Positions 33,164 through 44,657 of a stretch of 64,000 bases of DNA are shown here, in pieces; the stretch's first letter is position 1; each line of letters begins with the position of its first letter. The notes beneath the pieces are model-generated. The model had not been told where the DNA came from. It searched no databases and saw only the letters and a list, made by a program, of their open reading frames with translations. Where the stretch lies: the IMG/VR virus record IMGVR_UViG_3300027749_002876, positions 186,001 to 250,000 of that record; one strand, written 5' to 3'. A program made the position numbers and the translations under genes.

Positions 33164-34108
33164 TTACACGGAACCATAACTTGCGGATGCGAGCCAACCT
33201 CTGGTAGTACCTACACCTGTAGTATCGGTAGCTACAACTCCTGTGTTTGATACTAGGTTGGTCATTGATAACTTAGTATTGGTAACATTTTGACCATATC
33301 CAAATATAGCCTTATCGGTACCATAACCTGCGGCTGCTAATGAATATCTAGCAGTGCCAACACCGGTAGTATCACTAGCAATAGTACCTGTATTACTTAC
33401 TAGATTAGTTATTGCTGTTACATCCCCGGATACTGTACCAAAACCAAATCCAAAAATAGCTTTATCAGTGCCGTAGCCTGCGGCTGCTAATGCATACCTA
33501 CTAGTACCGACACCTATCACATCATTACCAACTACACCTGTATTTGAAACTAGATTGGTGATTGAGTTTGGACCACCACCTGTTCCATATGAAAAAATAG
33601 CTTTATCAGTACCGTATCCTGCGGCTGCTAACGCATATCTAGCAGTGCCAACACCTGTTACATCATTACCAACTACACCTGTATTTGAAACTAGGTTAGT
33701 TAGTGAATAAGTTGTTGCTCCGATTCCATATCCAAATATAGCTTTATCAGTTCCATAGCCTGCGGCTGCTAACGAATATCTAGCAGTGCCAACACCCGTA
33801 GTATCTGTAGCAACTACACCTGCATTTGATACTAGATTGGTCACCGATACTGCCGCAAATGACCCATCTCGCCCAAATCCAAATATAGCTTTATCAGTAC
33901 CATAACCTGCGGCTGCAAGTTGTTGTCTAGCAGTGCCAACACCCGTAGTATCTGTAGCAACTACACCTGTGTTTGATACTAAGTTAGTTATCGAAATTTG
34001 TGTACCGGAATTATTAGTACCATATCCAAAAATTGCTTTATATGAGGGTGGGGGTTGTGGAGTTACACTTACTCCACCGCCAAATGAAATTCCTGCTCCA
34101 ATATCCAT
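33164..34108 (-). CDS. six-repeat Kelch-like beta-propeller protein, paralog 1
   Basis: same six-repeat architecture; own late promoter at 34128-34135. Confidence 0.75.
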   Translation of the reverse strand: MDIGAGISFGGGVSVTPQPPPSYKAIFGYGTNNSGTQISITNLVSNTGVVATDTTGVGTARQQLAAAGYGTDKAIFGFGRDGSFAAVSVTNLVSNAGVVATDTTGVGTARYSLAAAGYGTDKAIFGYGIGATTYSLTNLVSNTGVVGNDVTGVGTARYALAAAGYGTDKAIFSYGTGGGPNSITNLVSNTGVVGNDVIGVGTSRYALAAAGYGTDKAIFGFGFGTVSGDVTAITNLVSNTGTIASDTTGVGTARYSLAAAGYGTDKAIFGYGQNVTNTKLSMTNLVSNTGVVATDTTGVGTTRGWLASASYGSV

Positions 34109-34133: not shown

Positions 34134-34583
34134 TCAGAGATCGCCCTCTTTTCGATTTTCACTATAAAATGCGTCAAAACTGCCACCGGGATAGCGACTT
34201 TCTAACTTCTTAACATTCTCAGCAATCACTTCATTTGGATCTAAATTCAATGCTCTACAAGCATTAATCCAATACCAAATTACATCTCCTAACTCACGTT
34301 TCATATGATAAACATTCTCATCTGTTAGTGCTTTTCCCTGAAAGAAAATCTTTTTGGGAATCTCAATAAACTCTCCAGACTCTGCGGCTAAACCCAAACA
34401 AGCGGTTAACAATAATGGAATATTAACATCTGGACCATGCTTTGTTAATCCATCATTTAAATCTATTTCACAATTACTATCTAATCGGTCTAGAGTGTCC
34501 ATAAATGTAGTCAAGTCATTACTTGGTTTACTTGTTACAGCCTTTACAAATTCACTATATTTGTTTAAATCAATGTTACTCAT
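34134..34583 (-). CDS. mazG: MazG-like nucleotide pyrophosphohydrolase
   Basis: GLAAESGEFIEIPKK...RELGDVIWY...NVKKLESRY. Confidence 0.9.
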   Translation of the reverse strand: MSNIDLNKYSEFVKAVTSKPSNDLTTFMDTLDRLDSNCEIDLNDGLTKHGPDVNIPLLLTACLGLAAESGEFIEIPKKIFFQGKALTDENVYHMKRELGDVIWYWINACRALNLDPNEVIAENVKKLESRYPGGSFDAFYSENRKEGDL

Positions 34584-35749
34584 TAAAATGCTTTCAGTAT
34601 AATCATGTTCTCATTAAAGCGTCCATTGGGTGCTGTAGCAACTGCTTTAATATCTTTAAAATACTTACGTGCCGCAGGCTTACTACCCATTACTTCTTTA
34701 ATCTGCTCAGCCGGTTTACGTAATGTCTTAACTTCACTTTGTGCGGTATCAAATCCGAGCAATGTATTACCTTTAACAGTAAATGCTTTACTGTAATCAT
34801 CAGCAATGTAATGATGTAACTTACGTTTTGCACTATCATAAATCCAAGCCTCACTAGCTCCATGTAATTTGATCGGACTAATGCTTGCCAAATCAAGTTT
34901 GCTTGCAGTATCTTTAAATACTTTTTGATATTTCAATTTAGCTACAATTTTCTCAACAGGCACAGCTTTACGTGCCCTAGGAGCTTTAGCGGCTTTCTTA
35001 ACACTAATGTAACTGTTCAAATCATTGATAACCAATTCAATGAACTTAACAATGTTCTTAACTTGCGTTTTAGTTAAATGGTCGTAACCTTGCACTAGTT
35101 GTGCATCGGTACCTTTGAGTAACTCCTCAAACTCATTTTGTTTCTTTTTCCATACTTCAGTTAAAATACTGATATGTTGTGGCATCACATTCTTTTTAGC
35201 GACTTCATCCATAGGACGTAGTGTGTGCTTTGTAGGTGCACCAGATGTAATGAACTCATCAAACAATCCTTCAAGTTCACCACCAGCTTCACGTGCTTTG
35301 TCACGCAAAATTTCCTGAATGTTGGGTCGTGATGGTGCCTCAACTTCAACTTTTTCTTCTTCCGGTTTGTGTACTAACTTTAGCAAACGATTGATTTCGT
35401 TTTCAAGTGTTAGTTCCTCATGCTCGGTTAATGATAGTCCACGCAATTGCATACGTGCTAACCAGCACAATGTTAGTAAGAATTCATTTTCATGTATCTT
35501 ACGCATAATCTTAGCATCAGTAGGACGTTTATTGTATTCCAAATATTGGGACAATAATTCTTTAGCGTCTTTCTTACCATAAAAACGATGATACCAAGTA
35601 AAACTACGCATCAATGCGACTCTACGTTTATCCTCATCTGGTTGTAGTACAAATAAGGGTTCATCCCCATAATGTTGTACATCTGCATCCCGAGGATTCA
35701 ATGCTTTAACTAGACTATGGTCCTCTGTATTACGCTTACGTGTTGCCAT
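34583..35749 (-). CDS. hypothetical early protein (start revised to MATRKR)
   Basis: AGGAG SD and a consensus sigma70 promoter upstream; C-terminal KTLRKP...NGRFNE. Confidence 0.75.
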   Translation of the reverse strand: MATRKRNTEDHSLVKALNPRDADVQHYGDEPLFVLQPDEDKRRVALMRSFTWYHRFYGKKDAKELLSQYLEYNKRPTDAKIMRKIHENEFLLTLCWLARMQLRGLSLTEHEELTLENEINRLLKLVHKPEEEKVEVEAPSRPNIQEILRDKAREAGGELEGLFDEFITSGAPTKHTLRPMDEVAKKNVMPQHISILTEVWKKKQNEFEELLKGTDAQLVQGYDHLTKTQVKNIVKFIELVINDLNSYISVKKAAKAPRARKAVPVEKIVAKLKYQKVFKDTASKLDLASISPIKLHGASEAWIYDSAKRKLHHYIADDYSKAFTVKGNTLLGFDTAQSEVKTLRKPAEQIKEVMGSKPAARKYFKDIKAVATAPNGRFNENMIILKAF

Positions 35750-35776
35750 TAGGCACTCCTTTGTATTGATTTTATT

Positions 35777-35805
35777 ATTATAACATAACCCATATTTATT
35801 GTCAA
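35777..35805 (-). promoter_or_regulatory. consensus sigma70 promoter TTGACA-N17-TATAAT
   Basis: exact consensus; divergent from the + strand late promoter at 35833-35840. Confidence 0.85.
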
Positions 35806-35845
35806 CCTTAGGATTCAAGCGTAGGACATTGCGATAAATACTATT

Positions 35846-37540
35846 ATGCCAAAACTGTCACTATACCGCCCAAATAAACAAAATGATTATCGTTTCTTCG
35901 ATAGGACAATATCCGAAGAATTACGTGTTGGCGGCACGGATTTATACATTCACAAGTATTTAGGTCCAACTAATCAAGGACCTAGTATTGATTATACTCA
36001 ACCAGAATATGATAGTTTAAATCCTACTAATATTCAGGATCTATTATTCCTAGAGAATAGAGATAGAACATACGATCCAAACATTTATAGATTACGTGGT
36101 CACTATAATGTACAGAATTTAGACTTTGATTTAAGTCAATTTGGTTTATTTTTAAATAACGATATTATCTTTATCAATGTACATTATAATGATATGATTG
36201 ATATTGTTGGTCGCAAGTTAATGGTGGGTGATGTATTAGAATTACCTCACTTATTAGATTATAATCCATTAAAAGAAACTATCCCAGTAGCATTAAAAAG
36301 ATTTTATAGTATTACTGATGCTAACTTTTCCAGTGAAGGATTTAGTCAAACATGGTATCCACATATGTGGCGTATTAAATGTGAACCATTAGTTGACAGT
36401 GAAGAATTTAGTCAAATATTAGCTGAACCAATTAACCAAGATAACTATTTAGGATTATGGGATAAAGATAAAACATATCCACCGGGTTATGTTATTACAT
36501 TTGGTGATAAGAATTATGTCAGTAAAATAGAAGTACCTATTGGCATTATGCCACCAAATCCAACATATTGGGAGTTAGATACGGCATCAAATCTTAAAGA
36601 TATTCTCGCTACTTATAATAAGAATATTGCAATTAATAATGCGGCATTGGAAGAGGCTAAACGTCTTGTACCTAAATCAGGATATGATAATAATAATTTA
36701 TATATTGTGCCTACATATGGTGTATTTGAAACTGATACACAATTATCAGGTAAATATAATCAACCTGCACCACCTGTTAATGTTATAATATCAAACTTTG
36801 GTCCGCCTACTGCTACTGTACAAATGATGCGTTCTTCACAATATAGAAACGCTAGCCCAGTATTACGTATACCTGCTAATTCAGTAAAAACAATTTGGGA
36901 TATGACACATGAAGGCGGTGCAATAGAACCTAGTGCAACGTTGTCATTACGATCAATGACCATTAAACCTACATTAACTGACACTGGTTCAGGTGCAGTA
37001 TCAGGTGATATTGTATTGACACTTGATAGTATTGGCGTCATTACAGGACCATATGGTACAGCAGATAATACATATGCAACGGCTGACCAGAATCCAGAAT
37101 TACCAGGATTTACCGATGAGATAACACCAGACATGGACTTTAGAGCAGATTGTGATCCACGATTCCAATTCATTGCACGTAGTAGTCCAAGAAGTTTTGG
37201 ATATACAACAGGTTACTTAGATGGTACAGGTGAAGCTCCAAATGGATTCCCAACAGGTGCTGGCATTAGTTTCCCGCAAAATCCTCAAGTAGGAGATTAT
37301 TTCTTACGTATAGATTATTTGCCACAATTACTATATCGTTGGGATGGTCAATTGTGGATAAGAATTTCACAAAATGTAAGAACAGATACCGGTATGACTA
37401 CAGGAGATTTGTCACAACAATCTAGCTTCATAAATAATAGCAATGTAACAGTATTAACTGATGGCACAACTACTACACAGAAACAGGCATTGAGTACAAT
37501 ACTTACAATTGCACCAGACACGATACCACCACAACCTTAA
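35846..37540 (+). CDS. neck/head-closure protein (gp14-like) with extensions
   Basis: upstream of gp15; LSQFGLFL..D and GDVLELP pattern; WDKDKTYPPGYVI...PPNPTYW insert; GATAAATA 5 nt before ATG. Confidence 0.65.
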   Translation: MPKLSLYRPNKQNDYRFFDRTISEELRVGGTDLYIHKYLGPTNQGPSIDYTQPEYDSLNPTNIQDLLFLENRDRTYDPNIYRLRGHYNVQNLDFDLSQFGLFLNNDIIFINVHYNDMIDIVGRKLMVGDVLELPHLLDYNPLKETIPVALKRFYSITDANFSSEGFSQTWYPHMWRIKCEPLVDSEEFSQILAEPINQDNYLGLWDKDKTYPPGYVITFGDKNYVSKIEVPIGIMPPNPTYWELDTASNLKDILATYNKNIAINNAALEEAKRLVPKSGYDNNNLYIVPTYGVFETDTQLSGKYNQPAPPVNVIISNFGPPTATVQMMRSSQYRNASPVLRIPANSVKTIWDMTHEGGAIEPSATLSLRSMTIKPTLTDTGSGAVSGDIVLTLDSIGVITGPYGTADNTYATADQNPELPGFTDEITPDMDFRADCDPRFQFIARSSPRSFGYTTGYLDGTGEAPNGFPTGAGISFPQNPQVGDYFLRIDYLPQLLYRWDGQLWIRISQNVRTDTGMTTGDLSQQSSFINNSNVTVLTDGTTTTQKQALSTILTIAPDTIPPQP

Positions 37541-37549
37541 AGAATATAT

Positions 37550-38926
37550 ATGGCAGCTTTCTTCTATGATAATCAGGTACGCAGATTTTTAATTCAATTT
37601 GCGAAAATTTTTTCCAATTGGGAAGTTACCAAAGGTAAAGATCCTGCAGGTAATGAGATATTTGTTCGTGTTCCTATTATGTATGGTGATAGTAGTAGAC
37701 AAGCTAGCACTATCATAGCTAATAACAGTGCAAGTAATTTGCCGAGTGCACCACTGATGACTTATTATATCAGTGGATTAGAATACGATCAAAAACGTAC
37801 ACAGGACCCTACGTTCATTGATAAGATACAAGTTCGTCAACGTGCATACAATAATGACACACAAAATTATGAGCAAGTACAGGGGCAAGCATTTACAGTT
37901 GAAAGATTAATGCCCGTACCTTATACATTAAGAATAACAGTTGATTTATGGACTACTAATTATCAACAGAAATTGGAATTAGTTGAACAATTAGGCACAT
38001 TGTTTAATCCATCATTAGAAATACAAAGTACTGATAACTTCATTGATTGGACAAGTTTAAGTGTTGTATATCAAGATGGTATAACATTTACCAGTCGCAG
38101 TATACCACAGGGTACAGGTAATCCTATTGATGTATTAAGTTGGAAATTTTATATGCCCATCTGGTTAAGCAATGCCGCTAAACTTAAAAAGATGGGTGTT
38201 ATCGAAAAAGTTATTGCCAGTATCTTTAAAGGTCAAGCACTACAAGATATACAAGATGATGATTTGTTATTGGGTACTCGACAAAAGATTACACCATATG
38301 GATACAAACTATTGTTGATAGGTAATAGACTTCAACTATTACCTGCTGATGAAGCATTTTATCCAAGCAATGAAAGTTTAGAATACCCTCCTCCACCTGA
38401 CACAAGTTTATATTGGAGTAGTTTATTAAATGTATATGGAACATTACGTCCGGGTATCAGTCAAATATGGTTACAAAATCCATTTATGACCACTGATATC
38501 GTAGGTACTATTGTTCCTGATCCATTAGATGATAGATTATTAATATATGATATCGATGCCGACACCCTGCCACAAAACACATTGGATCCTGTAGACAGTG
38601 TAATTAATCCAACAGTCACAGGACCAAACGCAGGGTTGCCTAGTCCTATTAACGGGCGTAGATATCTTATTGTAGAAGATATTGGTAGTCCAGACAATAC
38701 TACCATAGCTTGGGGAAATTTAGTAGCCAATGCAAATGATATCATTGAATATGATGGTACATCAAGTGAATGGTTTGTATCATTTGATAGTCAACTGGCT
38801 ACTACCATTGAATATGTAACTAACCTTACTACTGCCTTACAATATAGATTTGATTATATCAACAACGTATGGATGAAATCATTTGAAGGCTGGTACGACC
38901 AGGGATCGTATTCAATTGTGATTTAA
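37550..38926 (+). CDS. gp15: tail terminator / sheath stabiliser (gp15-like)
   Basis: FFYDNQVRRFLIQF...VPIMYG...MPVPY.L...LELVEQL..LFNP. Confidence 0.85.
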   Translation: MAAFFYDNQVRRFLIQFAKIFSNWEVTKGKDPAGNEIFVRVPIMYGDSSRQASTIIANNSASNLPSAPLMTYYISGLEYDQKRTQDPTFIDKIQVRQRAYNNDTQNYEQVQGQAFTVERLMPVPYTLRITVDLWTTNYQQKLELVEQLGTLFNPSLEIQSTDNFIDWTSLSVVYQDGITFTSRSIPQGTGNPIDVLSWKFYMPIWLSNAAKLKKMGVIEKVIASIFKGQALQDIQDDDLLLGTRQKITPYGYKLLLIGNRLQLLPADEAFYPSNESLEYPPPPDTSLYWSSLLNVYGTLRPGISQIWLQNPFMTTDIVGTIVPDPLDDRLLIYDIDADTLPQNTLDPVDSVINPTVTGPNAGLPSPINGRRYLIVEDIGSPDNTTIAWGNLVANANDIIEYDGTSSEWFVSFDSQLATTIEYVTNLTTALQYRFDYINNVWMKSFEGWYDQGSYSIVI

Positions 38927-39742
38927 TATAACTTCCCATCCAGCTAATGATTTAGTTTGCTTTCTAACCAAATTAGATGCTTGTGCATATTGTATACCCA
39001 ATGTCCTGAGAAATAATGTCATTTCATAACAGGTTTCTTGTTTTATTTCTCCGGTAATCTTATTACGAAAGGTGAATGTCTCTTTAATTGCCCTAGCATT
39101 GTTCAACCCTGAATTTTTTTCTTTGTTAATTTTCATTACTTTGGGCCTACTGTTTATTTCAATACTTATTCTACTTCTTTTTTCTTTTATTTCAGGAAGT
39201 TGATTTGTAATTGCAAGTGATTTTTTTCTTTTATCTATTGCATCCTGACTGAATGCTTTAATGAGCCTATTATGTTTTTTAACAGGATCGGCCTCTCTTT
39301 TTAGAGCAGCCATTCTACGTTTTTCTTTTGTTTCTGACAATAAATCTGTATTTTTTCTTTTTTCTTTTGCGGCTGAAAGATTAATAGCTTTTTTCATATT
39401 TTCATTTCTTTTTATTGACACTGCAGGATCACTATAATTAATACCTTTACTATTTTTCTTATTAAGGTAATCATTGCGCTTAGCGGCATTAAGTCTATCT
39501 AATACTCTTTTTTCCCAGTTCAACGCTTCATTAATTCTATTTTCATTAGTGAATGTATTTCTTATTTCTATAATACTAGGTACACCATTTTCTTTAACAT
39601 AAGCGTTAACGTAATCACTGGATGTAAAATATGTTACGAATAGATCGGATGGGTGACAGTTTTTTGCGTATCTAACCCCATAATATTTCATTCCAGTAGA
39701 CCACTCTAGATAATAGGTATATGGTACATTATAATATTGCAT
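38912..39742 (-). mobile_element. free-standing GIY-YIG (Seg-like) homing endonuclease gene
   Basis: YTYYLEWSTGMKYYGVR...ALNWEKRVL...YLNK; basic helical linker; opposite orientation to the host operon; late promoter at 39759-39766. Confidence 0.8.
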
Positions 39743-39832
39743 GATTGATCCTTTTATATATTTATCATTAAGGTGATTATTCTATAAAAAGTAATTATTC
39801 TATCGTCATCTAATACTGTGATAAATCATAGT

Positions 39833-40249
39833 ATGAGTAATATTTCTGCAGGTGTCTTTTTTTATTCCGGTACTACTAACCGTTTCTTATATCTATTAAG
39901 AAATGATAATAGAAACCCGGGTAACTGGGGAATACCTGGTGGTAAGATAGAAAGTGATGAAACATTACTTGAAGGACTACAACGTGAATGTATGGAAGAA
40001 ATAAATTACTTTCCAAATCATGCTAAACTTGTGCCCATTCAAAAGTTTGTAAATAATACATTTACCTATCATACATTTTTTTGTAAAGTGTCAGAAGAAT
40101 TTACACCTATATTAAATGAAGAACATTGCGGTTATGCATGGGTAGGTGAGAAACAATATCCTAAACCATTACATCCGGGATTATTCAATACTGTTAATTT
40201 TGATATTGTTCAATCTAAGTTAAATGCACTTACAAAAAAAGAGACCTAA
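39833..40249 (+). CDS. NUDIX hydrolase (start revised to MSNISAG)
   Basis: WGIPGGKIESDETLLEGLQRECMEE Nudix box; GATAAATC 5 nt before ATG. Confidence 0.9.
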   Translation: MSNISAGVFFYSGTTNRFLYLLRNDNRNPGNWGIPGGKIESDETLLEGLQRECMEEINYFPNHAKLVPIQKFVNNTFTYHTFFCKVSEEFTPILNEEHCGYAWVGEKQYPKPLHPGLFNTVNFDIVQSKLNALTKKET

Positions 40250-40260
40250 GTCTCTTTTTT
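40234..40260. terminator. bidirectional intrinsic terminator
   Basis: A7-GAGAC-CTAA-GTCTC-T6 between convergent genes. Confidence 0.8.
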
Positions 40261-40571
40261 TATTTTAGCAATTTTGCTATCGTATCGAATCCCAGTGATC
40301 CTATTACAACACCAGCACCCATCATCATCCAGCGCCATTTTTCAAGTGCAGAAACTTTGTCAGACATAGACTTATGGGCGTTAGCACTAGCTTCTTTCAT
40401 TTCTTTTAGAAGCTGGTGTGTATCTTCGTTATTCTTCGCCATACAAACATTAACATCTTTGATATCAGCTTTGATTTCACTGATATCATTTGTGATGTTT
40501 TGTACTTGTACTTGAAGAACTGCGATTTCCGTTTCAGTCTTTGGCATTTTAATAGTTCTACCAGTTACCAT
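40260..40571 (-). CDS. coiled-coil protein with C-terminal transmembrane helix (XhlA/holin-like)
   Basis: heptad region followed by WRWMMMGAGVVIGSLGF. Confidence 0.6.
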   Translation of the reverse strand: MVTGRTIKMPKTETEIAVLQVQVQNITNDISEIKADIKDVNVCMAKNNEDTHQLLKEMKEASANAHKSMSDKVSALEKWRWMMMGAGVVIGSLGFDTIAKLLK

Positions 40572-40573
40572 GA

Positions 40574-41962
40574 TTAAGCACTAGCAATAACTACGATTGG
40601 GTTAGGCTGACCTTCATATGTATTAGCGGCGTATGCTGTATTGAATGTAGCGATAACATCAGGATTAACACTATTAACAACAGCAGTACCTGTACCAGTA
40701 CCTGTAGCTGTAGCAATAAATGTAACACCTGTCATATTACTTGCTGAACCACATAATGTCCAATTTGTCGTACCAGTACTATAAATTGTATACACTGTAC
40801 CTACACTTAATGAACCGGCTGCAACTTGCGTTGGGAACACTTCAGTGTTGTAATCATTAACACTTGAAACATATGCTGTAGCAGAGGCTGCATCAGTAGA
40901 CAATATATTCATTGTATTTGGTGTCAATGCTGTGTTAGCAACATTGGCTGTATAGCATTGTGCAATTAAACCAGTTGTACCACCTTGTACTAGATACTTT
41001 GTCTTACCTTTTTGACGTAAGATGAAACCAGCTTCGTCATTTGCATATACAAAAGATGTGCCTGCATAATTTGCAGTAGAATTTGCAGCCAACACAGTAA
41101 CGTCAATAGTAGCATTTGCCGCTGTTGTGCCGGTAGTAACTGCTTTCTGTGGACCATATTGTGAGGTTGAAACAGTAAATGCAGATGCGTTAGCAATAGC
41201 ATCAACAAAGTATGTTGAACCTGCAATTAATCCGCCGGTAGTTGTATCAAACACAACTGGTGCACCCACAAACAATGTTTGTGCGTTTCCTGAAGTGCGA
41301 ATAACGTTACCTGTAGCATTTGTGTTAGCAACAGCAACAGTAATATAACCTGTATTTGTATCAACAAAACCAACATTAATTGGTGTTGTCTGACCTGGAA
41401 TACCAGTTGGTTGAAGAATTTGAACTGCTGATCCAACTGATAATGTATTTGCAAAATCAGTGCCGGCACCGTAGACATTCAAATTAGCTGTGTCACCATA
41501 GATGATACCTGTACCAGAGATACCAATAGCTACTTGTGGTAGAACTTGTGATCCAACGATAGCTGTGTTACCACCAACTACACCATATGTGTTAGCGTTG
41601 TTTGACGGAAAGCCTGCACCACCTTCTGGGTTGTTGAAATATGCATCAACAACTTCAAATGATGCTTTAACAGTGCCACCAGTTGAATTAGACAATGAAG
41701 CCATTACACGTGGTTGAACACTTAGTTGTGTCGTTGAAACACTGAATGTAGTGTTTGATAGTATAGTATCAACATAATATAATGTGTTGGTTACTAAACC
41801 ACTAATGGCACCTGCGACTACAAATGACATACCAGATGCTATGCCAACAGTTGGACTAGTTGTTAGATTTCCACCTGAGATTGTAACGATACTGCCTGTT
41901 GTTGCTGTATCAGTGATTGTTAAGACTGCTTGAGCCTTTGCGATTTTTAGAGGACGTCCCAT
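40574..41962 (-). CDS. virion structural protein (MGRPLK...)
   Basis: T/A/G/N-rich; two GL....YYV..I....F.VST modules; ILRQKGKTKYLV; AAGGA SD. Confidence 0.7.
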   Translation of the reverse strand: MGRPLKIAKAQAVLTITDTATTGSIVTISGGNLTTSPTVGIASGMSFVVAGAISGLVTNTLYYVDTILSNTTFSVSTTQLSVQPRVMASLSNSTGGTVKASFEVVDAYFNNPEGGAGFPSNNANTYGVVGGNTAIVGSQVLPQVAIGISGTGIIYGDTANLNVYGAGTDFANTLSVGSAVQILQPTGIPGQTTPINVGFVDTNTGYITVAVANTNATGNVIRTSGNAQTLFVGAPVVFDTTTGGLIAGSTYFVDAIANASAFTVSTSQYGPQKAVTTGTTAANATIDVTVLAANSTANYAGTSFVYANDEAGFILRQKGKTKYLVQGGTTGLIAQCYTANVANTALTPNTMNILSTDAASATAYVSSVNDYNTEVFPTQVAAGSLSVGTVYTIYSTGTTNWTLCGSASNMTGVTFIATATGTGTGTAVVNSVNPDVIATFNTAYAANTYEGQPNPIVVIASA

Positions 41963-41983
41963 TTGTTTTTCCTTTGATAAAAT

Positions 41984-42039
41984 TAGCGGGTTCTAGCCGC
42001 TACGCAGTGGGTAACTGCATAAACTCTCAGAATGAGAGT
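41984..42039 (-). ncRNA. candidate structured 5' leader RNA with three abutting hairpins
   Basis: ACUCUCA-UUC-UGAGAGU; UAUGCAGU-UACCC-ACUGCGUA (one U.G pair); UAGCGG-CUAGAAC-CCGCUA; lies between the late promoter at 42048-42055 and the SD. Confidence 0.6.
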
Positions 42040-42069
42040 GTATGATGTATTTATCAAATAAGGGTAAAA

Positions 42070-42621
42070 TTAACCAGTAAAGCTACCAGTTGGGCTGGTG
42101 TAACCACTTGTTCCTGTATTAGGATGAGGTGCGCCCAATTCAGTTATAGTAAACAATGTATTAGCTCCCGCTGTGGTTAGATAAGAAACAATGTTTCCTT
42201 GTCCAACTATGATACTGTTATTAACTGTGTTAGGAGGAATCAACTCACTATTTGCAGTAGCTATCGTATAAGGAACTCCGTAAGGATTGTATCTTGCAGT
42301 TGTGTTAGCAATGGCAACTGCGGAATTTGCAGTCAATGTTAAACTTGTGTTATTTGCAATGGCTGCTACAATACCTACATTTGCGCCTGTTGTATTACCA
42401 ATCCAACTACCAACAGCTAATTCAGTACTGAATGATGTACCTGCTCCGGTAACTGTTGCACTATTAGTTGCACAAGTTACATTTCCAGTCAATGCAACGT
42501 TTGGGAAGCTTGTGGTAAACTGAATACCTACATTAGATGTAGCTATTCTAATTTTATCTGTCGCAATATTTGCGGAAGCTGCCGCTGTTGCGCTGTTTGC
42601 TGTATATGCGTATGATGCCAT
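42070..42621 (-). CDS. virion structural protein
   Basis: 183 aa, A/T/N-rich; VTGAGTSF.TEL.VG module; AATAAATA upstream. Confidence 0.65.
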   Translation of the reverse strand: MASYAYTANSATAAASANIATDKIRIATSNVGIQFTTSFPNVALTGNVTCATNSATVTGAGTSFSTELAVGSWIGNTTGANVGIVAAIANNTSLTLTANSAVAIANTTARYNPYGVPYTIATANSELIPPNTVNNSIIVGQGNIVSYLTTAGANTLFTITELGAPHPNTGTSGYTSPTGSFTG

Positions 42622-42647
42622 TTTAAATTCCTATATCTTATTTATTC

Positions 42648-44657
42648 TTATAGTCTGCCTACGGCGACCTCTATTATACCTTCACCGTCAAAGTTTTCTA
42701 ATGCTTTGCCGATAACTGTTCCCATTTGTGGTGATGCACTATGTTTAGCATAACCATCACCAGCTGACACTAACATGTCACCTTTACTTATTGTTCCACG
42801 AACTTTAGTTGGCACACGACCTTGTAATGCAAGTGCTACAATATGTTCACCTTTGCATTTCATATTCATTACATATGCTGGATCAGTAGAAACAACACCG
42901 GCTACTTTGTTAGTTCCATCTTCAGCTAATGTTACTTCTTTATCACCACCAAATGCTAGTACTGTGCCAGGTTTATATTTTTTATCTGCTTCGTAATATT
43001 CTGCTAAGTCAGCATATGTTGCACTAAGTCTTGATCCTGCACTCAAACTGAAGTTACCAGTTATAGTACCTACTGTAGTATTTGCTCCGGTTGTTAAGAC
43101 TGTAGTAATAATATTACCTGCAGTTATGTTACCTGTTGTAGATATAGTATTACTTCCATATGAGTTCAATAATGTAACAACATTACTATCACCGTATGTT
43201 CCATTACCTCCACCTGTAGCGGCTGCAAATACACCATTACCATATAATACATTACTAGAATTACCATCTTTATTAATAGTAGCAATATTTCCTATACCAC
43301 TAACATTTGCTACAGCTACACTGTTGGCTATATTAGCGTAAGCTACTGTACCTGATACATTGGCACCCGGAATAGAAGTTAATCCAGTTGCGGCTCCATA
43401 ATATGTGCCTGTTATATTTGCACCAGTAATGTTTCCACTTGATGACAATGATGTAAGAGTACCTACACTTGTAATATTAGGTTGAGCATTGGTTGTAACA
43501 GTACCTGCAGTTGACGAATTACCTGTTACATTGCCTGTAATATTAGCAACAAGGTCTCCGGAAATAGAAACACTTGTTGTATTGGCACTAATTGTTTGTG
43601 TGCCTATATAGATAGTACTATTAGCCAAATACAAATCATTAAATCTATTTGTATTATTACCTAAATTATATGTTATGTTTGCATTAGGTATAATATTACC
43701 TGCAACAACAAGACCAGATAGTGTACCTACGCTTGTAATATTTGGTTGTGATCCGGTTGTTAATGATCCGGCAATGGTAGTTGCACTGAAATTACCTGTC
43801 AATGTTACAATATTTCCATTTGTGATTGTAAAGTTAGCAGAACCATTTAAAATACCATTATTATTATATTGTAGTGTATTAGCAGAACCACCTGGATTGG
43901 CTACTCCACTACCAGTAATAGAAGTTGCAATAGCGTTTGGACTGTTAGTGTAACTTAAGCCAGTACCAACTGAATTTGCTGTTAAATCTATATCAGTGAA
44001 TAATGAAACGTTACCTGATGTTGGATAATCATTTGCCAACTTGGTATAAAAAGTACGACTGTTAACAATAGCATTAGCGTTACTATTGGCACCTGAGTTA
44101 GACCCAGATACGCCTGAAATAGTAATTTTTGTACTATTTGTGTATGGTGTGGTGTTTGCAACGGTCATCACAATTGGAGTAGCATTTGATAGTGCTACAA
44201 TATTTGTGTACAGAGTACCTTTAGTTGTCCAATTTAAATTACCTTGACCATCAGTTTCTAATATATATCCAGTTGCACCACCACCAATTTTAACATTAGA
44301 AATAGTGCCTAAATGTATGGGTATACCTTCATATTCAGCAGTGTTGTCAGGGCTCTCGGCATTTCCACCAGTATTAATCCACGAATTAGTATTGATATCA
44401 TATGCTAATATTTGACCGGGCAGTACATTAGTAATGTTAACATTACTACCATTACTACCTTCAACTTGACTAAAACTAATAGTTGAATAAGAAGTAAGTA
44501 CTTCAACATTTTCAACATTGGTTACTGCTACGTTGCTAGCACCTATAAACAATTGTTTAGCATCATTAGCCCAACCGAATTGAGCCTCATCAAGCTGTGG
44601 CAGGTCTACAAGATTGCCTGAACGTTGTTGTATCTTCGAGATTTGGATGATTGCCAT
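42648..44657 (-). CDS. tail fibre/spike protein with C-terminal intramolecular-chaperone-like domain
   Basis: N-terminal ISKIQQRSG..LPQL...FGWA.D..LFIG; QPNITSVGTL repeats; C-terminal ADLAEYY...GRVPTKV.G...KGD.LV...VIGKALE. Confidence 0.78.
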   Translation of the reverse strand: MAIIQISKIQQRSGNLVDLPQLDEAQFGWANDAKQLFIGASNVAVTNVENVEVLTSYSTISFSQVEGSNGSNVNITNVLPGQILAYDINTNSWINTGGNAESPDNTAEYEGIPIHLGTISNVKIGGGATGYILETDGQGNLNWTTKGTLYTNIVALSNATPIVMTVANTTPYTNSTKITISGVSGSNSGANSNANAIVNSRTFYTKLANDYPTSGNVSLFTDIDLTANSVGTGLSYTNSPNAIATSITGSGVANPGGSANTLQYNNNGILNGSANFTITNGNIVTLTGNFSATTIAGSLTTGSQPNITSVGTLSGLVVAGNIIPNANITYNLGNNTNRFNDLYLANSTIYIGTQTISANTTSVSISGDLVANITGNVTGNSSTAGTVTTNAQPNITSVGTLTSLSSSGNITGANITGTYYGAATGLTSIPGANVSGTVAYANIANSVAVANVSGIGNIATINKDGNSSNVLYGNGVFAAATGGGNGTYGDSNVVTLLNSYGSNTISTTGNITAGNIITTVLTTGANTTVGTITGNFSLSAGSRLSATYADLAEYYEADKKYKPGTVLAFGGDKEVTLAEDGTNKVAGVVSTDPAYVMNMKCKGEHIVALALQGRVPTKVRGTISKGDMLVSAGDGYAKHSASPQMGTVIGKALENFDGEGIIEVAVGRL

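What the first reader, a model, noticed from the sequence alone, without database searches (positions are those of the whole stretch)
38888..39813. GIY-YIG insertion leaves a synonymously recoded ghost of the gp15 3' end
gp15 ends TAT TCA ATT GTG ATT TAA (YSIVI*, 38909-38926), overlapping the endonuclease's own 3' end. Beyond the endonuclease, 39796-39813 reads TAT TCT ATC GTC ATC TAA, also YSIVI*, differing only at four third positions. A second partial copy, GGT GAT TAT TCT AT (GDYSI), lies at 39772-39785. Inference: the element inserted inside the last codons of an essential gene, supplied a recoded replacement terminus and stranded the original. The preceding TAC GAC CAG GGA TCG codons are atypically GC-ending. 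This pinpoints the insertion site and likely target without any intron.
Basis: partly seen in the sequence, partly recalled or inferred. Interest (0 to 1): 0.62.

Follow-up and report, generated by a model that had tools for sequence, protein, structure and literature searches.

The report
Homing endonuclease cassette strands gp15 terminus
A selfish DNA-cutting-enzyme gene sits inside the last codons of a giant phage's tail gene, supplying a replacement gene end and leaving the original end as a dead 20-base relic; relatives without the insert confirm this, and the layout is known from fungal mitochondria but I found no description of it in phages.

Summary
Of about 155 related metagenomic loci that lack the endonuclease, gp15 stops 2-17 nt before NUDIX. 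The closest of them (L004: gp15 core 100% identical in protein) ends with exactly the 'ghost' sequence and the same downstream bases.

The insert is a 276-aa free-standing GIY-YIG (Seg/I-TevI-like) endonuclease gene on the minus strand. The last 48 nt of gp15 (38879-38926) are a replacement tract. They hold 17 of the 44 differences from L004, including three amino-acid changes, so the tract is not purely synonymous. It resembles gp15 ends of more distant lineages and was probably imported.

The 'second partial copy' (39770-39785) belongs to the cassette. Window 39424-39785 is 98.3% identical to a cassette in a phage whose flanks are only about 70% identical, and identity stops exactly at 39785. 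An 8-nt filler follows, then 20 nt of the resident native end.

Endonuclease homologues of 43-84% identity occupy the same site in at least 11 other lineages, each with an altered gp15 end and a ghost. Insert-bearing alleles carry Ser or Asn where empty alleles carry Asp (9/12 versus 3/97).

Cleavage specificity and immunity are inferred, not shown. The closest precedent is the fungal mitochondrial mORF 'gene hybrid'.

The parts
37550..38926 (+). gp15-like tail sheath stabiliser / tail completion gene, now a hybrid: resident body plus replacement 3' end
   Evidence: Pfam T4-gp15_tss E 2.6e-20; PHROG 11196 E 2.8e-73. The first 438 aa are 100% identical to insert-free L004.
38879..38926 (+). Replacement terminus: 15 sense codons plus stop. 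17 nt and 3 aa differ from the nearest empty allele.
   Evidence: 17 of the 44 gp15 differences from L004 fall here, and none in 38750-38878; nearest natural ends are in more distant lineages (8-9/48 differences). The left border can lie anywhere in 38750-38879.
38912..39742 (-). Free-standing GIY-YIG (Seg/I-TevI-like) homing endonuclease gene, 276 aa. Catalytic domain about aa 1-105 (39428-39742); helical NUMOD3-like linker about aa 106-210; C-terminal DNA-binding domain about aa 211-276.
   Evidence: Model pLDDT 93.7. Best PDB match is the I-TevI catalytic domain 1ln0, Z 7.9, rmsd 3.1, 86 aligned residues of the 94-residue chain; the next nine rows are other GIY-YIG domains; the C-terminus matches the I-HmuI DNA-binding part at Z 4.6. 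Homologues hit SegE_GIY-YIG, NUMOD3 and I-TevI_DNA-bd. Phage homologues are annotated GIY-YIG/Seg-like. E77 and N94 are invariant; Y20, Y21, G22 and R24 are at least 90% conserved.
39424..39785 (-). Recently shared cassette segment: catalytic half of the endonuclease gene, its 5' region and the ghost stub
   Evidence: 6 mismatches in 362 nt against L086, whose gp15 and NUDIX flanks are about 70% identical. Identity drops sharply at 39423 and at 39786.
39743..39769 (-). Endonuclease 5' region: Shine-Dalgarno-like AAGGA (39750-39754) and GATAAAT-like box (39760-39767)
   Evidence: Read; conserved in 8 lineages. Promoter function is not shown: the consensus scan is not above chance, and TGATAAAT occurs 13 times against 7.6 expected.
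39770..39785 (+). Cassette-borne ghost stub AAGGTGATTATTCTAT (native codons -9 to -4, starting at base 2 of CAA)
   Evidence: The same stub follows the endonuclease 5' region in L086-89, where it continues as an uninterrupted GDYSIVI-stop ghost. It is also present in L090, L262/263, L094, L098, L264 and L093 in increasingly decayed form. Its GGTGA core is invariant in 8 lineages.
39786..39793 (.). 8-nt junction filler AAAAAGTA between the stub and the resident remnant
   Evidence: Absent from native alleles. An A-run also follows the stub in L262/263, L094 and L098. Alternative reading: part of an 18-nt tandem duplication (repeat D5).
39794..39813 (+).
   Evidence: 20/20 identical to L004, L005 and L006, and the match continues into NUDIX. 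No start codon follows the in-frame stop at 39766-39768.
39818..40249 (+). NUDIX hydrolase gene (the ATG at 39833 is the more likely start), preceded by an extended -10-like TGTGATAAAT at 39817-39826
   Evidence: Pfam NUDIX E 2.6e-16. It directly follows gp15 in all empty alleles and in PA5oct-like jumbo phages.

Best explanation
A free-standing GIY-YIG homing endonuclease cassette occupies the gp15/NUDIX junction of a giant phage with a genome of at least 524 kb. The cassette has three parts. The first is a replacement copy of the last codons of gp15, fused in frame to the resident gene. The second is the endonuclease gene, antisense, with its stop codon inside the replacement end. The third is the endonuclease's 5' region ending in a 16-nt stub of a native gp15 end. 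In this lineage the cassette arrived recently by recombination. The left junction is a homologous crossover inside gp15, at or before 38879. The right junction is an illegitimate join (8-nt filler) that left the last 20 nt of the resident gp15 stranded in front of NUDIX. Inferred, not shown: the enzyme cuts the well-conserved native gp15 end of empty genomes, and repair from a cassette-bearing co-infecting genome copies the cassette in. Also inferred: the altered end protects the carrier, through Gly GGK to GGA/GGC and Asp GAT to Ser or Asn, and through the split of the site at CA|AGGTGAT.
For: The empty site is proven. 77 of 80 loci and 78 of 78 further loci lack the insert and have gp15 abutting NUDIX; L004-L006 match the ghost exactly. 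The acquisition is recent and horizontal. The gp15 core is 100% identical to insert-free L004 and nested in a 20-row insert-free clade with support 99. The divergence boundary at 38879 is sharp. Window 39424-39785 is 98.3% identical to L086 against flanks of about 70%. The site is specific. Homologues of 43-84% identity sit at the same junction in L086-99, L103, L104, L107/108 and L262-267, while more distant ones sit elsewhere. Every insert-bearing lineage has an altered gp15 end and a ghost or ghost remnant. There is an allele association: non-Asp in 9/12 insert-bearing lineages against 3/97 empty alleles (p 1e-8), and Gly codon GGA/GGC in 12/12 against 26/97 (p 9e-7). The native end is unusually conserved at third positions, 96-100% for GAT TAT TCT. 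Signs of the homing life cycle are present: a frameshifted endonuclease in L094/95, and hybrid empty alleles in L227, L233, L235 and L243 that look like loss by recombination between the two copies. Endonuclease identity is supported.
Against: No cleavage data exist, so the target, the cut position and immunity are all inferred. The protein itself has no Pfam or NCBIfam hit and no sequence hit in the PDB; the fold Z of 7.9 is just under the tool's own caution line of 8. The association tests are not corrected for phylogeny. Three insert-bearing lineages keep Asp (L093, L096, L104). L086 and the window share the catalytic half but not the C-terminal DNA-binding domain, so the two enzymes may not read the same sequence. 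The donor of the window's replacement end was not found. The stub still carries the 'sensitive' GGTGAT, so a site confined to the last codons cannot be the whole target.
Confidence: 0.8

Rival explanations
1. Pure hitch-hiking. The cassette is an ordinary homing endonuclease, and the altered gp15 end is just donor polymorphism co-converted with it. It plays no part in immunity; protection comes only from the insertion splitting the site.
For: In its last 27 nt the replacement tract differs from natural ends of L241, L014 and L184 at only two codons, GAT to TCG and TCT to TCA. TCA is explained by the antisense endonuclease stop codon. Co-conversion of flanks is standard for phage homing (PMC2988022).
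Against: Ser or Asn at the Asp position recurs in 9 of 12 insert-bearing lineages with different cassettes and backgrounds, against 3 of 97 empty alleles. GAT to TCG changes all three bases.
Confidence: 0.3
2. The two partial copies at 39770-39813 arose by an 18-nt tandem duplication within a single ghost after insertion, not by joining a cassette-borne stub to a resident remnant.
For: the repeat finder reports 39770-39785 and 39788-39803 as 14/16 identical at a spacing of 18 nt, which keeps the frame.
Against: Identity to L086 ends exactly at 39785. L262/263 also have the stub followed by an A-run, but with different filler and a different truncation of the native end. The tandem model needs four extra substitutions within 18 nt, although the neighbouring DNA shows none.
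Confidence: 0.2
3. The relic is kept because it is regulatory DNA, not because it is neutral debris. The resident remnant would be part of the NUDIX upstream signal, and the stub part of the endonuclease's own promoter or operator.
For: The last codons of gp15 and the spacer are conserved at nucleotide level across lineages with 76-93% gp15 identity. The GGTGA core of the stub and the adjacent GATAAAT-like box are invariant in 8 cassettes whose proteins are only 55-84% identical, while the rest of the ghost decays. I-TevI represses its own promoter through an operator resembling its homing site (PMC2988022).
Against: Promoter-like matches are not above chance. The length of the resident remnant varies: 20 nt here and about 7 clean nt in L262/263. 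No binding data exist.
Confidence: 0.3
4. Assembly chimera or mis-join of two strain variants created an apparent duplication.
For: Metagenome assemblies of mixed strains can collapse or duplicate short repeats.
Against: An identical structure occurs in four contigs from four samples, one of them 524,565 bp. The same architecture occurs in many diverged lineages from ENA, JGI and Logan assemblies.
Confidence: 0.01

Closest known systems
Fungal mitochondrial mORF 'gene hybrids' (Allomyces macrogynus atp6, Paquin, Laforest and Lang 1994; Glomus atp6/atp9/cox2/nad3, Beaudet et al. 2013, PMC3630166)
   Same: An endonuclease ORF enters the 3' part of a host gene together with a foreign in-phase C-terminal coding piece. 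The native C-terminus stays downstream unexpressed. The native piece matches close relatives while the in-frame piece is divergent, mostly at synonymous sites. This is the same anatomy and the same reasoning as here.
   Different: That host is a mitochondrial genome; this one is a phage. There the ORF is usually co-oriented and often in phase with the host gene, whereas here it is antisense and overlaps the gene end by 15 nt. The duplicated piece here is very short (about 25 nt, against 50-300 nt there). Here the cassette also carries a ghost stub of its own, giving nested relics.
T4 Seg endonucleases (SegE, SegF, SegG): free-standing GIY-YIG homing endonucleases with 'intronless homing' and marker exclusion
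   Same: Free-standing GIY-YIG plus NUMOD3-type architecture. Sporadic presence at a fixed junction between conserved genes. Polymorphic flank next to the gene, consistent with co-conversion. Homologues match Pfam SegE_GIY-YIG (PMC2988022).
   Different: The review I read describes T4 seg genes lying between genes or overlapping an upstream ORF at their start. It mentions no duplication or stranded copy of the target gene's end (zero occurrences of 'duplicat'). The window's protein has no direct Pfam hit, and activity is untested.
I-TevI (td intron endonuclease of T4)
   Same: Best structural match of the catalytic domain (1ln0, Z 7.9). I-TevI binds an operator similar to its homing site over its own promoter, which is a precedent for a retained half-site upstream of the gene.
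   Different: I-TevI is intron-encoded; no intron is present here. About 13-14% sequence identity. The operator role of the stub is only a hypothesis.
mobE insertion in nrdA of Aeromonas phage Aeh1 (PMC3045599; PMC2988022)
   Same: A phage homing endonuclease gene inserted inside an essential coding region, with the host gene product adapted around the insertion (abstract seen).
   Different: There the gene is split into two polypeptides that reassemble. Here the gene stays whole because the cassette supplies a new end. mobE is an HNH enzyme, not GIY-YIG.

Membership tests
GIY-YIG homing endonucleases (Seg / I-TevI type) | GIY-YIG catalytic fold at the N-terminus | tested here: met
   AlphaFold model pLDDT 93.7. 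The top ten VIA-align rows are all GIY-YIG domains: I-TevI at Z 7.9 over 86 aligned residues of the 94-residue chain, then UvrC and PD-T4-3 at Z 5.2-5.4. Foldseek E-values alone were weak, and Z is just under the tool's caution level of 8.
GIY-YIG homing endonucleases (Seg / I-TevI type) | Conserved motif residues (two Tyr-containing strands, Arg, Glu, Asn) | tested here: met
   In 54 homologues E77 and N94 are invariant, and Y20, Y21, G22 and R24 are at least 90% conserved; the protein reads YTY...YYGVR. Equivalence to I-TevI R27, E75 and N90 was not checked residue by residue.
GIY-YIG homing endonucleases (Seg / I-TevI type) | Match to a curated GIY-YIG sequence profile | tested here: inconclusive
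   The window protein has no Pfam, NCBIfam or PDB sequence hit. Of 54 homologues, 4 match PF19835 SegE_GIY-YIG (best E 3.6e-5), 5 match NUMOD3 and 2 match I-TevI_DNA-bd.
GIY-YIG homing endonucleases (Seg / I-TevI type) | Sporadic presence at one fixed site among close relatives, with an intact empty site | tested here: met
GIY-YIG homing endonucleases (Seg / I-TevI type) | Site-specific double-strand cleavage of the empty allele and gene conversion | not testable with these tools
   Needs the protein and substrates. Only indirect signs are available: the divergence boundary, allele association and cassette mosaicism.
mORF-type gene hybrid (foreign C-terminus plus stranded native C-terminus) | In-phase replacement C-terminal coding piece next to the endonuclease ORF | tested here: met
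   38879-38926 is in frame with gp15, and the gene length is unchanged at 458 aa.
mORF-type gene hybrid (foreign C-terminus plus stranded native C-terminus) | Native terminus retained downstream and closer to relatives than the in-frame copy | tested here: met
   The remnant is 20/20 identical to L004, whereas the in-frame copy differs from it at 6/20 positions.
mORF-type gene hybrid (foreign C-terminus plus stranded native C-terminus) | Resides in a fungal mitochondrial genome, with the ORF usually co-oriented with the host gene | tested here: not met
   The context is a phage: gp15, virion genes, a 524-kb viral contig. The ORF is antisense. So this works like a mORF hybrid but is not a member of that set.
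Intron- or intein-borne homing endonuclease | Group I/II intron RNA or intein splicing domains around the ORF | tested here: not met
   No Rfam match at E up to 1 in 38000-40600. The ORF is on the opposite strand to gp15, and gp15 is uninterrupted.

The most novel reading that the evidence does not exclude
The cassette is a self-contained 'patch-and-cut' module, a third way beside introns and inteins for a homing endonuclease to live inside an essential phage gene. It carries an immune replacement for the end of the gene it destroys. The half-site it strands has been co-opted: the invariant GGTGA stub next to the endonuclease's start signals would serve as an operator for autorepression, as in I-TevI, and/or as the right-hand homology arm that lets the whole module move between phages only about 70% identical.
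Probability: 0.25. Interest if true: 0.7.

Novelty: new variant of a known kind. Interest (0 to 1): 0.55.

Why it matters
This locus gives a base-precise natural experiment for a phage homing endonuclease. It provides the empty site, the filled site, both junctions, about a dozen independent filled lineages, candidate loss alleles and a decaying copy. From sequence alone it predicts the target region (the last roughly 10 codons of gp15) and the immunity changes (Gly GGK to GGA/GGC, Asp to Ser or Asn), and both predictions can be tested in a simple cleavage assay. It shows that the 'foreign C-terminus plus stranded native C-terminus' route described for fungal mitochondria also operates in giant phages. 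It also shows such cassettes moving, and swapping catalytic and DNA-binding halves, between phages that are far apart in sequence. That makes them markers of recombination boundaries in uncultured megaphage populations.

Tried and rejected
(1) Direct family assignment of the endonuclease failed: Pfam at E up to 10, NCBIfam, PHROGs, and PDB sequence searches with the protein and with the profile gave nothing meaningful. The only hits were spurious Lys/Glu-rich eL24 matches. Assignment rests on homologues and fold.

(2) Megablast of the region against GenBank phages found no match. The nearest named phages share only about 30-34% gp15 identity.

(3) I tested whether the stub is the 5' arm of an RBS-sequestering hairpin, as in T4 late-gene control. 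There is no consensus structure in 8 lineages, and the single-sequence fold has z -0.87. Rejected.

(4) Sigma-70-like promoter and terminator scans gave 7 promoter-like sites against 9.5 expected, and no terminators. TGATAAAT is only mildly enriched, 13 against 7.6. No promoter claim is made.

(5) The search for close insert-free relatives of the L086 lineage found nothing above 84% gp15 identity, so the window-versus-L004 boundary analysis could not be repeated there.

(6) An exact-pattern scan of metagenome contigs for the 5'-region/stub junction returned only the window's own 524-kb contig.

(8) The other GIY-YIG paralogue in the 524-kb genome (L260) was only identified. It was not examined for a ghost.
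Full report
THE OBSERVATION. The gp15 homologue (37550-38926, plus strand; Pfam T4-gp15_tss E 2.6e-20; PHROG 11196 E 2.8e-73) ends TAT TCA ATT GTG ATT TAA at 38909-38926. A 276-aa ORF on the minus strand (38912-39742) converges on it and overlaps it by 15 nt; the antisense of the Ser codon TCA is the ORF's stop codon TGA. Beyond the ORF, 39796-39813 reads TAT TCT ATC GTC ATC TAA. A partial copy lies at 39772-39785, and its similarity to native sequence really starts at 39770. NUDIX (Pfam E 2.6e-16) follows, with a GTG at 39818 and an ATG at 39833.

RELATIVES SETTLE THE MAIN QUESTION. The window is part of a 91-kb IMG/VR record. It is 100% identical over the region to a 524,565-bp viral contig that CheckV rates complete. 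A gp15-based scan of viral contigs returned 80 loci. Only three of them, all 100% identical to the window, carry the ORF. In the other 77, the gp15 stop lies a few bases before NUDIX. A second scan added 78 more loci, all empty, with gaps of 2-17 nt.

The nearest empty alleles end with GG(G/A) GAT TAT TCT ATC GTC ATC TAA followed by TACTGTGATAAATCATAGTATGAG. They are L004 (99% gp15 identity) and L005/L006 (96%). That is letter for letter the window's 39794-39813 and what follows it, with the same 4-nt distance to the NUDIX GTG. Four independent assemblies share the arrangement, so it is not an artefact.

BOUNDARIES IN THIS GENOME. Against L004, gp15 has 44 nucleotide differences. Seventeen of them lie in the last 48 nt (38879-38923), and none lie in the 129 nt before that. 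The tract changes three residues (Y to F, G to D, D to S) besides synonymous sites, so 'synonymously recoded' holds only for the last five codons.

The tract is nearer to the natural gp15 ends of more distant lineages than to L004. It differs from L241, L240, L014 and L184 at 8-9 of 48 positions, and from L004 at 17 of 48. In the last 27 nt, all four differences from those distant ends lie in GAT to TCG and TCT to TCA. I therefore read the tract as imported with the cassette, not as recoded in place. The 'GC-ending' codons TAC GAC CAG are normal variants elsewhere, although GC3 is 0.44 in the tract against 0.23 in gp15 overall.

On the right, homology to L004 resumes at 39794. Net effect: 915 nt (38879-39793) stand where an empty allele has 28 nt, and 20 nt of native end are stranded.

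WHAT THE SECOND PARTIAL COPY IS. Endonuclease homologues of 84%, 78%, 74%, 67%, 61%, 60%, 59%, 55%, 49% and 43-53% identity were found. All sit at the same gp15/NUDIX junction in other lineages, antisense and abutting or overlapping the gp15 end. More distant family members sit at other sites in other phages.

In L086-89 the endonuclease 5' region is followed directly by an uninterrupted ghost, AAGGTGATTATTCTATCGTAATTTAA, which encodes GDYSIVI plus stop. L090 has a synonymous variant of it. L264 has a full ghost with four substitutions. L262/263 have the same 16-nt stub, an A-rich 25-nt filler, and then the native tail CATCTAA plus spacer. L094, L098 and L093 have decayed stubs.

Window 39424-39785 is 98.3% identical to L086 (6 mismatches in 362 nt), although the flanking genes are only about 70% identical. 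The identity ends exactly at 39785, the last base of the stub. So 39770-39785 is carried by the cassette, 39786-39793 is a junction filler, and 39794-39813 is the resident relic.

The alternative is an 18-nt tandem duplication. It is less parsimonious, because L262/263 share the stub plus A-run without any duplication.

HORIZONTAL MOVEMENT AND MODULARITY. On a tree of gp15 without its last 20 residues, the window is identical to insert-free L004. It is nested in a well-supported clade of 20 rows that otherwise lack the insert. The other insert-bearing lineages are scattered, and the label needs at least 5 changes on the tree.

L086 and L090 share gp15 and upstream DNA at 98.5% identity. From the endonuclease onward they are only 89% identical, and the endonuclease C-terminal part does not align. 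The window shares the catalytic half with L086 but not the DNA-binding half. The cassette therefore moves as a unit and also recombines internally at the domain border.

Three observations fit the gain, decay and loss cycle of homing genes. The endonuclease in L094/95 is frameshifted. A 405-nt internal fragment lies in an unrelated context in L261. The empty alleles of L227, L233, L235 and L243 combine an insert-type left part (GGA AAT TAT TCA GTG) with a native right part.

WHAT THE ENZYME IS. The protein has no direct profile hit. Its phage homologues are annotated as GIY-YIG, Seg-like or NUMOD3 proteins. Among 54 homologues, 4 match SegE_GIY-YIG, 5 match NUMOD3 and 2 match the I-TevI DNA-binding domain. 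The alignment has invariant Glu77 and Asn94 and a near-invariant YYG-x-R.

A high-confidence model (pLDDT 93.7) aligns best with the I-TevI catalytic domain (Z 7.9, rmsd 3.1 A, 86 aligned residues of the 94-residue chain), then with UvrC and PD-T4-3 GIY-YIG domains. Its C-terminus aligns with the DNA-binding part of I-HmuI. I accept the GIY-YIG assignment at the fold and homologue level. Catalysis is untested.

LIKELY MECHANISM (INFERRED). The native gp15 end is conserved even at third codon positions: 96-100% for GAT TAT TCT, against about 50-70% upstream. Such sequences are typical homing targets. Insert-bearing alleles differ from it in a consistent way. The Gly codon is GGA or GGC in 12 of 12 insert-bearing lineages against 26 of 97 empty alleles. 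The Asp codon is replaced by Ser or Asn in 9 of 12 against 3 of 97 (Fisher p 9e-7 and 1e-8, not phylogeny-corrected).

All ghosts begin at the same base, the second base of the CAA/CAG codon. That points to one ancestral insertion point, or to one cut position. The simplest reading has four steps. The enzyme cuts empty alleles in or near these codons. Repair copies the cassette from a co-infecting carrier. The carrier is protected by the altered end and by the split site. Where downstream homology is poor, the right end is joined illegitimately and a piece of the resident end is stranded.

The GGTGA core of the stub, next to a GATAAAT-like box and the ribosome-binding site, is invariant in eight cassettes while the rest of the ghost decays. 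This suggests a regulatory role. The precedent is I-TevI autorepression through an operator resembling its homing site (PMC2988022). An RNA-hairpin alternative was tested and rejected.

COMPARISON WITH WHAT IS KNOWN. The anatomy matches the fungal mitochondrial mORF 'gene hybrids'. There a foreign in-phase C-terminus arrives with an endonuclease ORF, and the native C-terminus, identical to that of the sister species, stays downstream (Allomyces atp6; Glomus atp6, atp9, cox2, nad3; PMC3630166).

Free-standing GIY-YIG genes, co-conversion and marker exclusion are textbook for T4 (PMC2988022). Gene-splitting insertions are also known in phages (mobE in Aeh1 nrdA). In the searches I could run I found no phage case described with a replacement terminus and a stranded native terminus. 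The held library is incomplete, so this absence is weak evidence. I rate the finding a new variant of a known kind: it is well supported and tidy, but not a new principle.

LIMITS. The donor of the left part was not sampled. The association statistics treat lineages as independent.

Noticed in passing
L085 / L268 (IMGVR_UViG_3300027749_002876 = Ga0209084_1000001, 524,565 bp): The window's phage is a megaphage. A 524.6-kb contig rated 100% complete by CheckV is 100% identical over window 35915-42742. The nearest named phages (Atu_ph07, Phosso, PA5oct group) share only about 30-34% gp15 identity.
   Followed up: partly
window 33206-34041 (inside minus-strand ORF 33164-34108): A tandem array of 141-nt (47-aa) units, 5.7 copies at about 71% match, lies inside a 314-aa ORF next to virion genes. 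It is probably a repeat-built structural or fibre protein.
   Followed up: no
L094:2856-3627 and L095: The endonuclease at the same gp15/NUDIX site is frameshifted after about 29 codons of the catalytic domain, in contigs from two sources. It is a decaying copy.
   Followed up: partly
L261 (1308-nt contig), positions 808-1212 of its reverse complement: A 405-nt internal piece of the endonuclease gene (96% identical to window 39178-39582, linker region only) sits in an unrelated context, without the catalytic or DNA-binding ends.
   Followed up: partly
L227, L233, L235, L243 (gp15 3' ends): These insert-free alleles end CAG GGA AAT TAT TCA GTG GTC ATC TAA followed by the native spacer. The left half is insert-type and the right half native, as expected if the endonuclease was lost by recombination between the replacement end and the ghost.
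   Followed up: partly
L086 versus L090 (whole loci): gp15 and upstream DNA are 98.5% identical, but from the endonuclease onward identity is 89%, and the endonuclease C-terminal domain does not align. A recombination boundary sits exactly at the gp15 end.
   Followed up: partly
window 34570-38926 versus L004: gp15 is about 2% divergent from L004 outside its last 48 nt, while the upstream 3 kb is about 7% divergent. This may reflect a recent conversion tract covering gp15.
   Followed up: no
window 39814-39835 and equivalent positions in L004-L080: NUDIX is preceded by an extended -10-like TGTGATAAAT about 7 nt before the ATG at 39833; another clade has TGCTATAAT about 10 nt before its ATG. 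No clear Shine-Dalgarno sequence is present, so the transcript may be leaderless.
   Followed up: no
G001:C1:175405-175614 and 522958-523167; G001:C1:426853-427275 (L258-L260): The 524-kb genome has two identical 203-aa frames that share only the endonuclease's C-terminal DNA-binding domain. One lies near the contig end, which may indicate a long repeat. There is also a distant 214-aa SegE-like GIY-YIG ORF (Pfam E 0.004).
   Followed up: partly
L098:5253-5918 (+): An extra 221-aa ORF with no Pfam match lies between gp15 and the upstream virion gene in one insert-bearing lineage. It is absent from the window.
   Followed up: no
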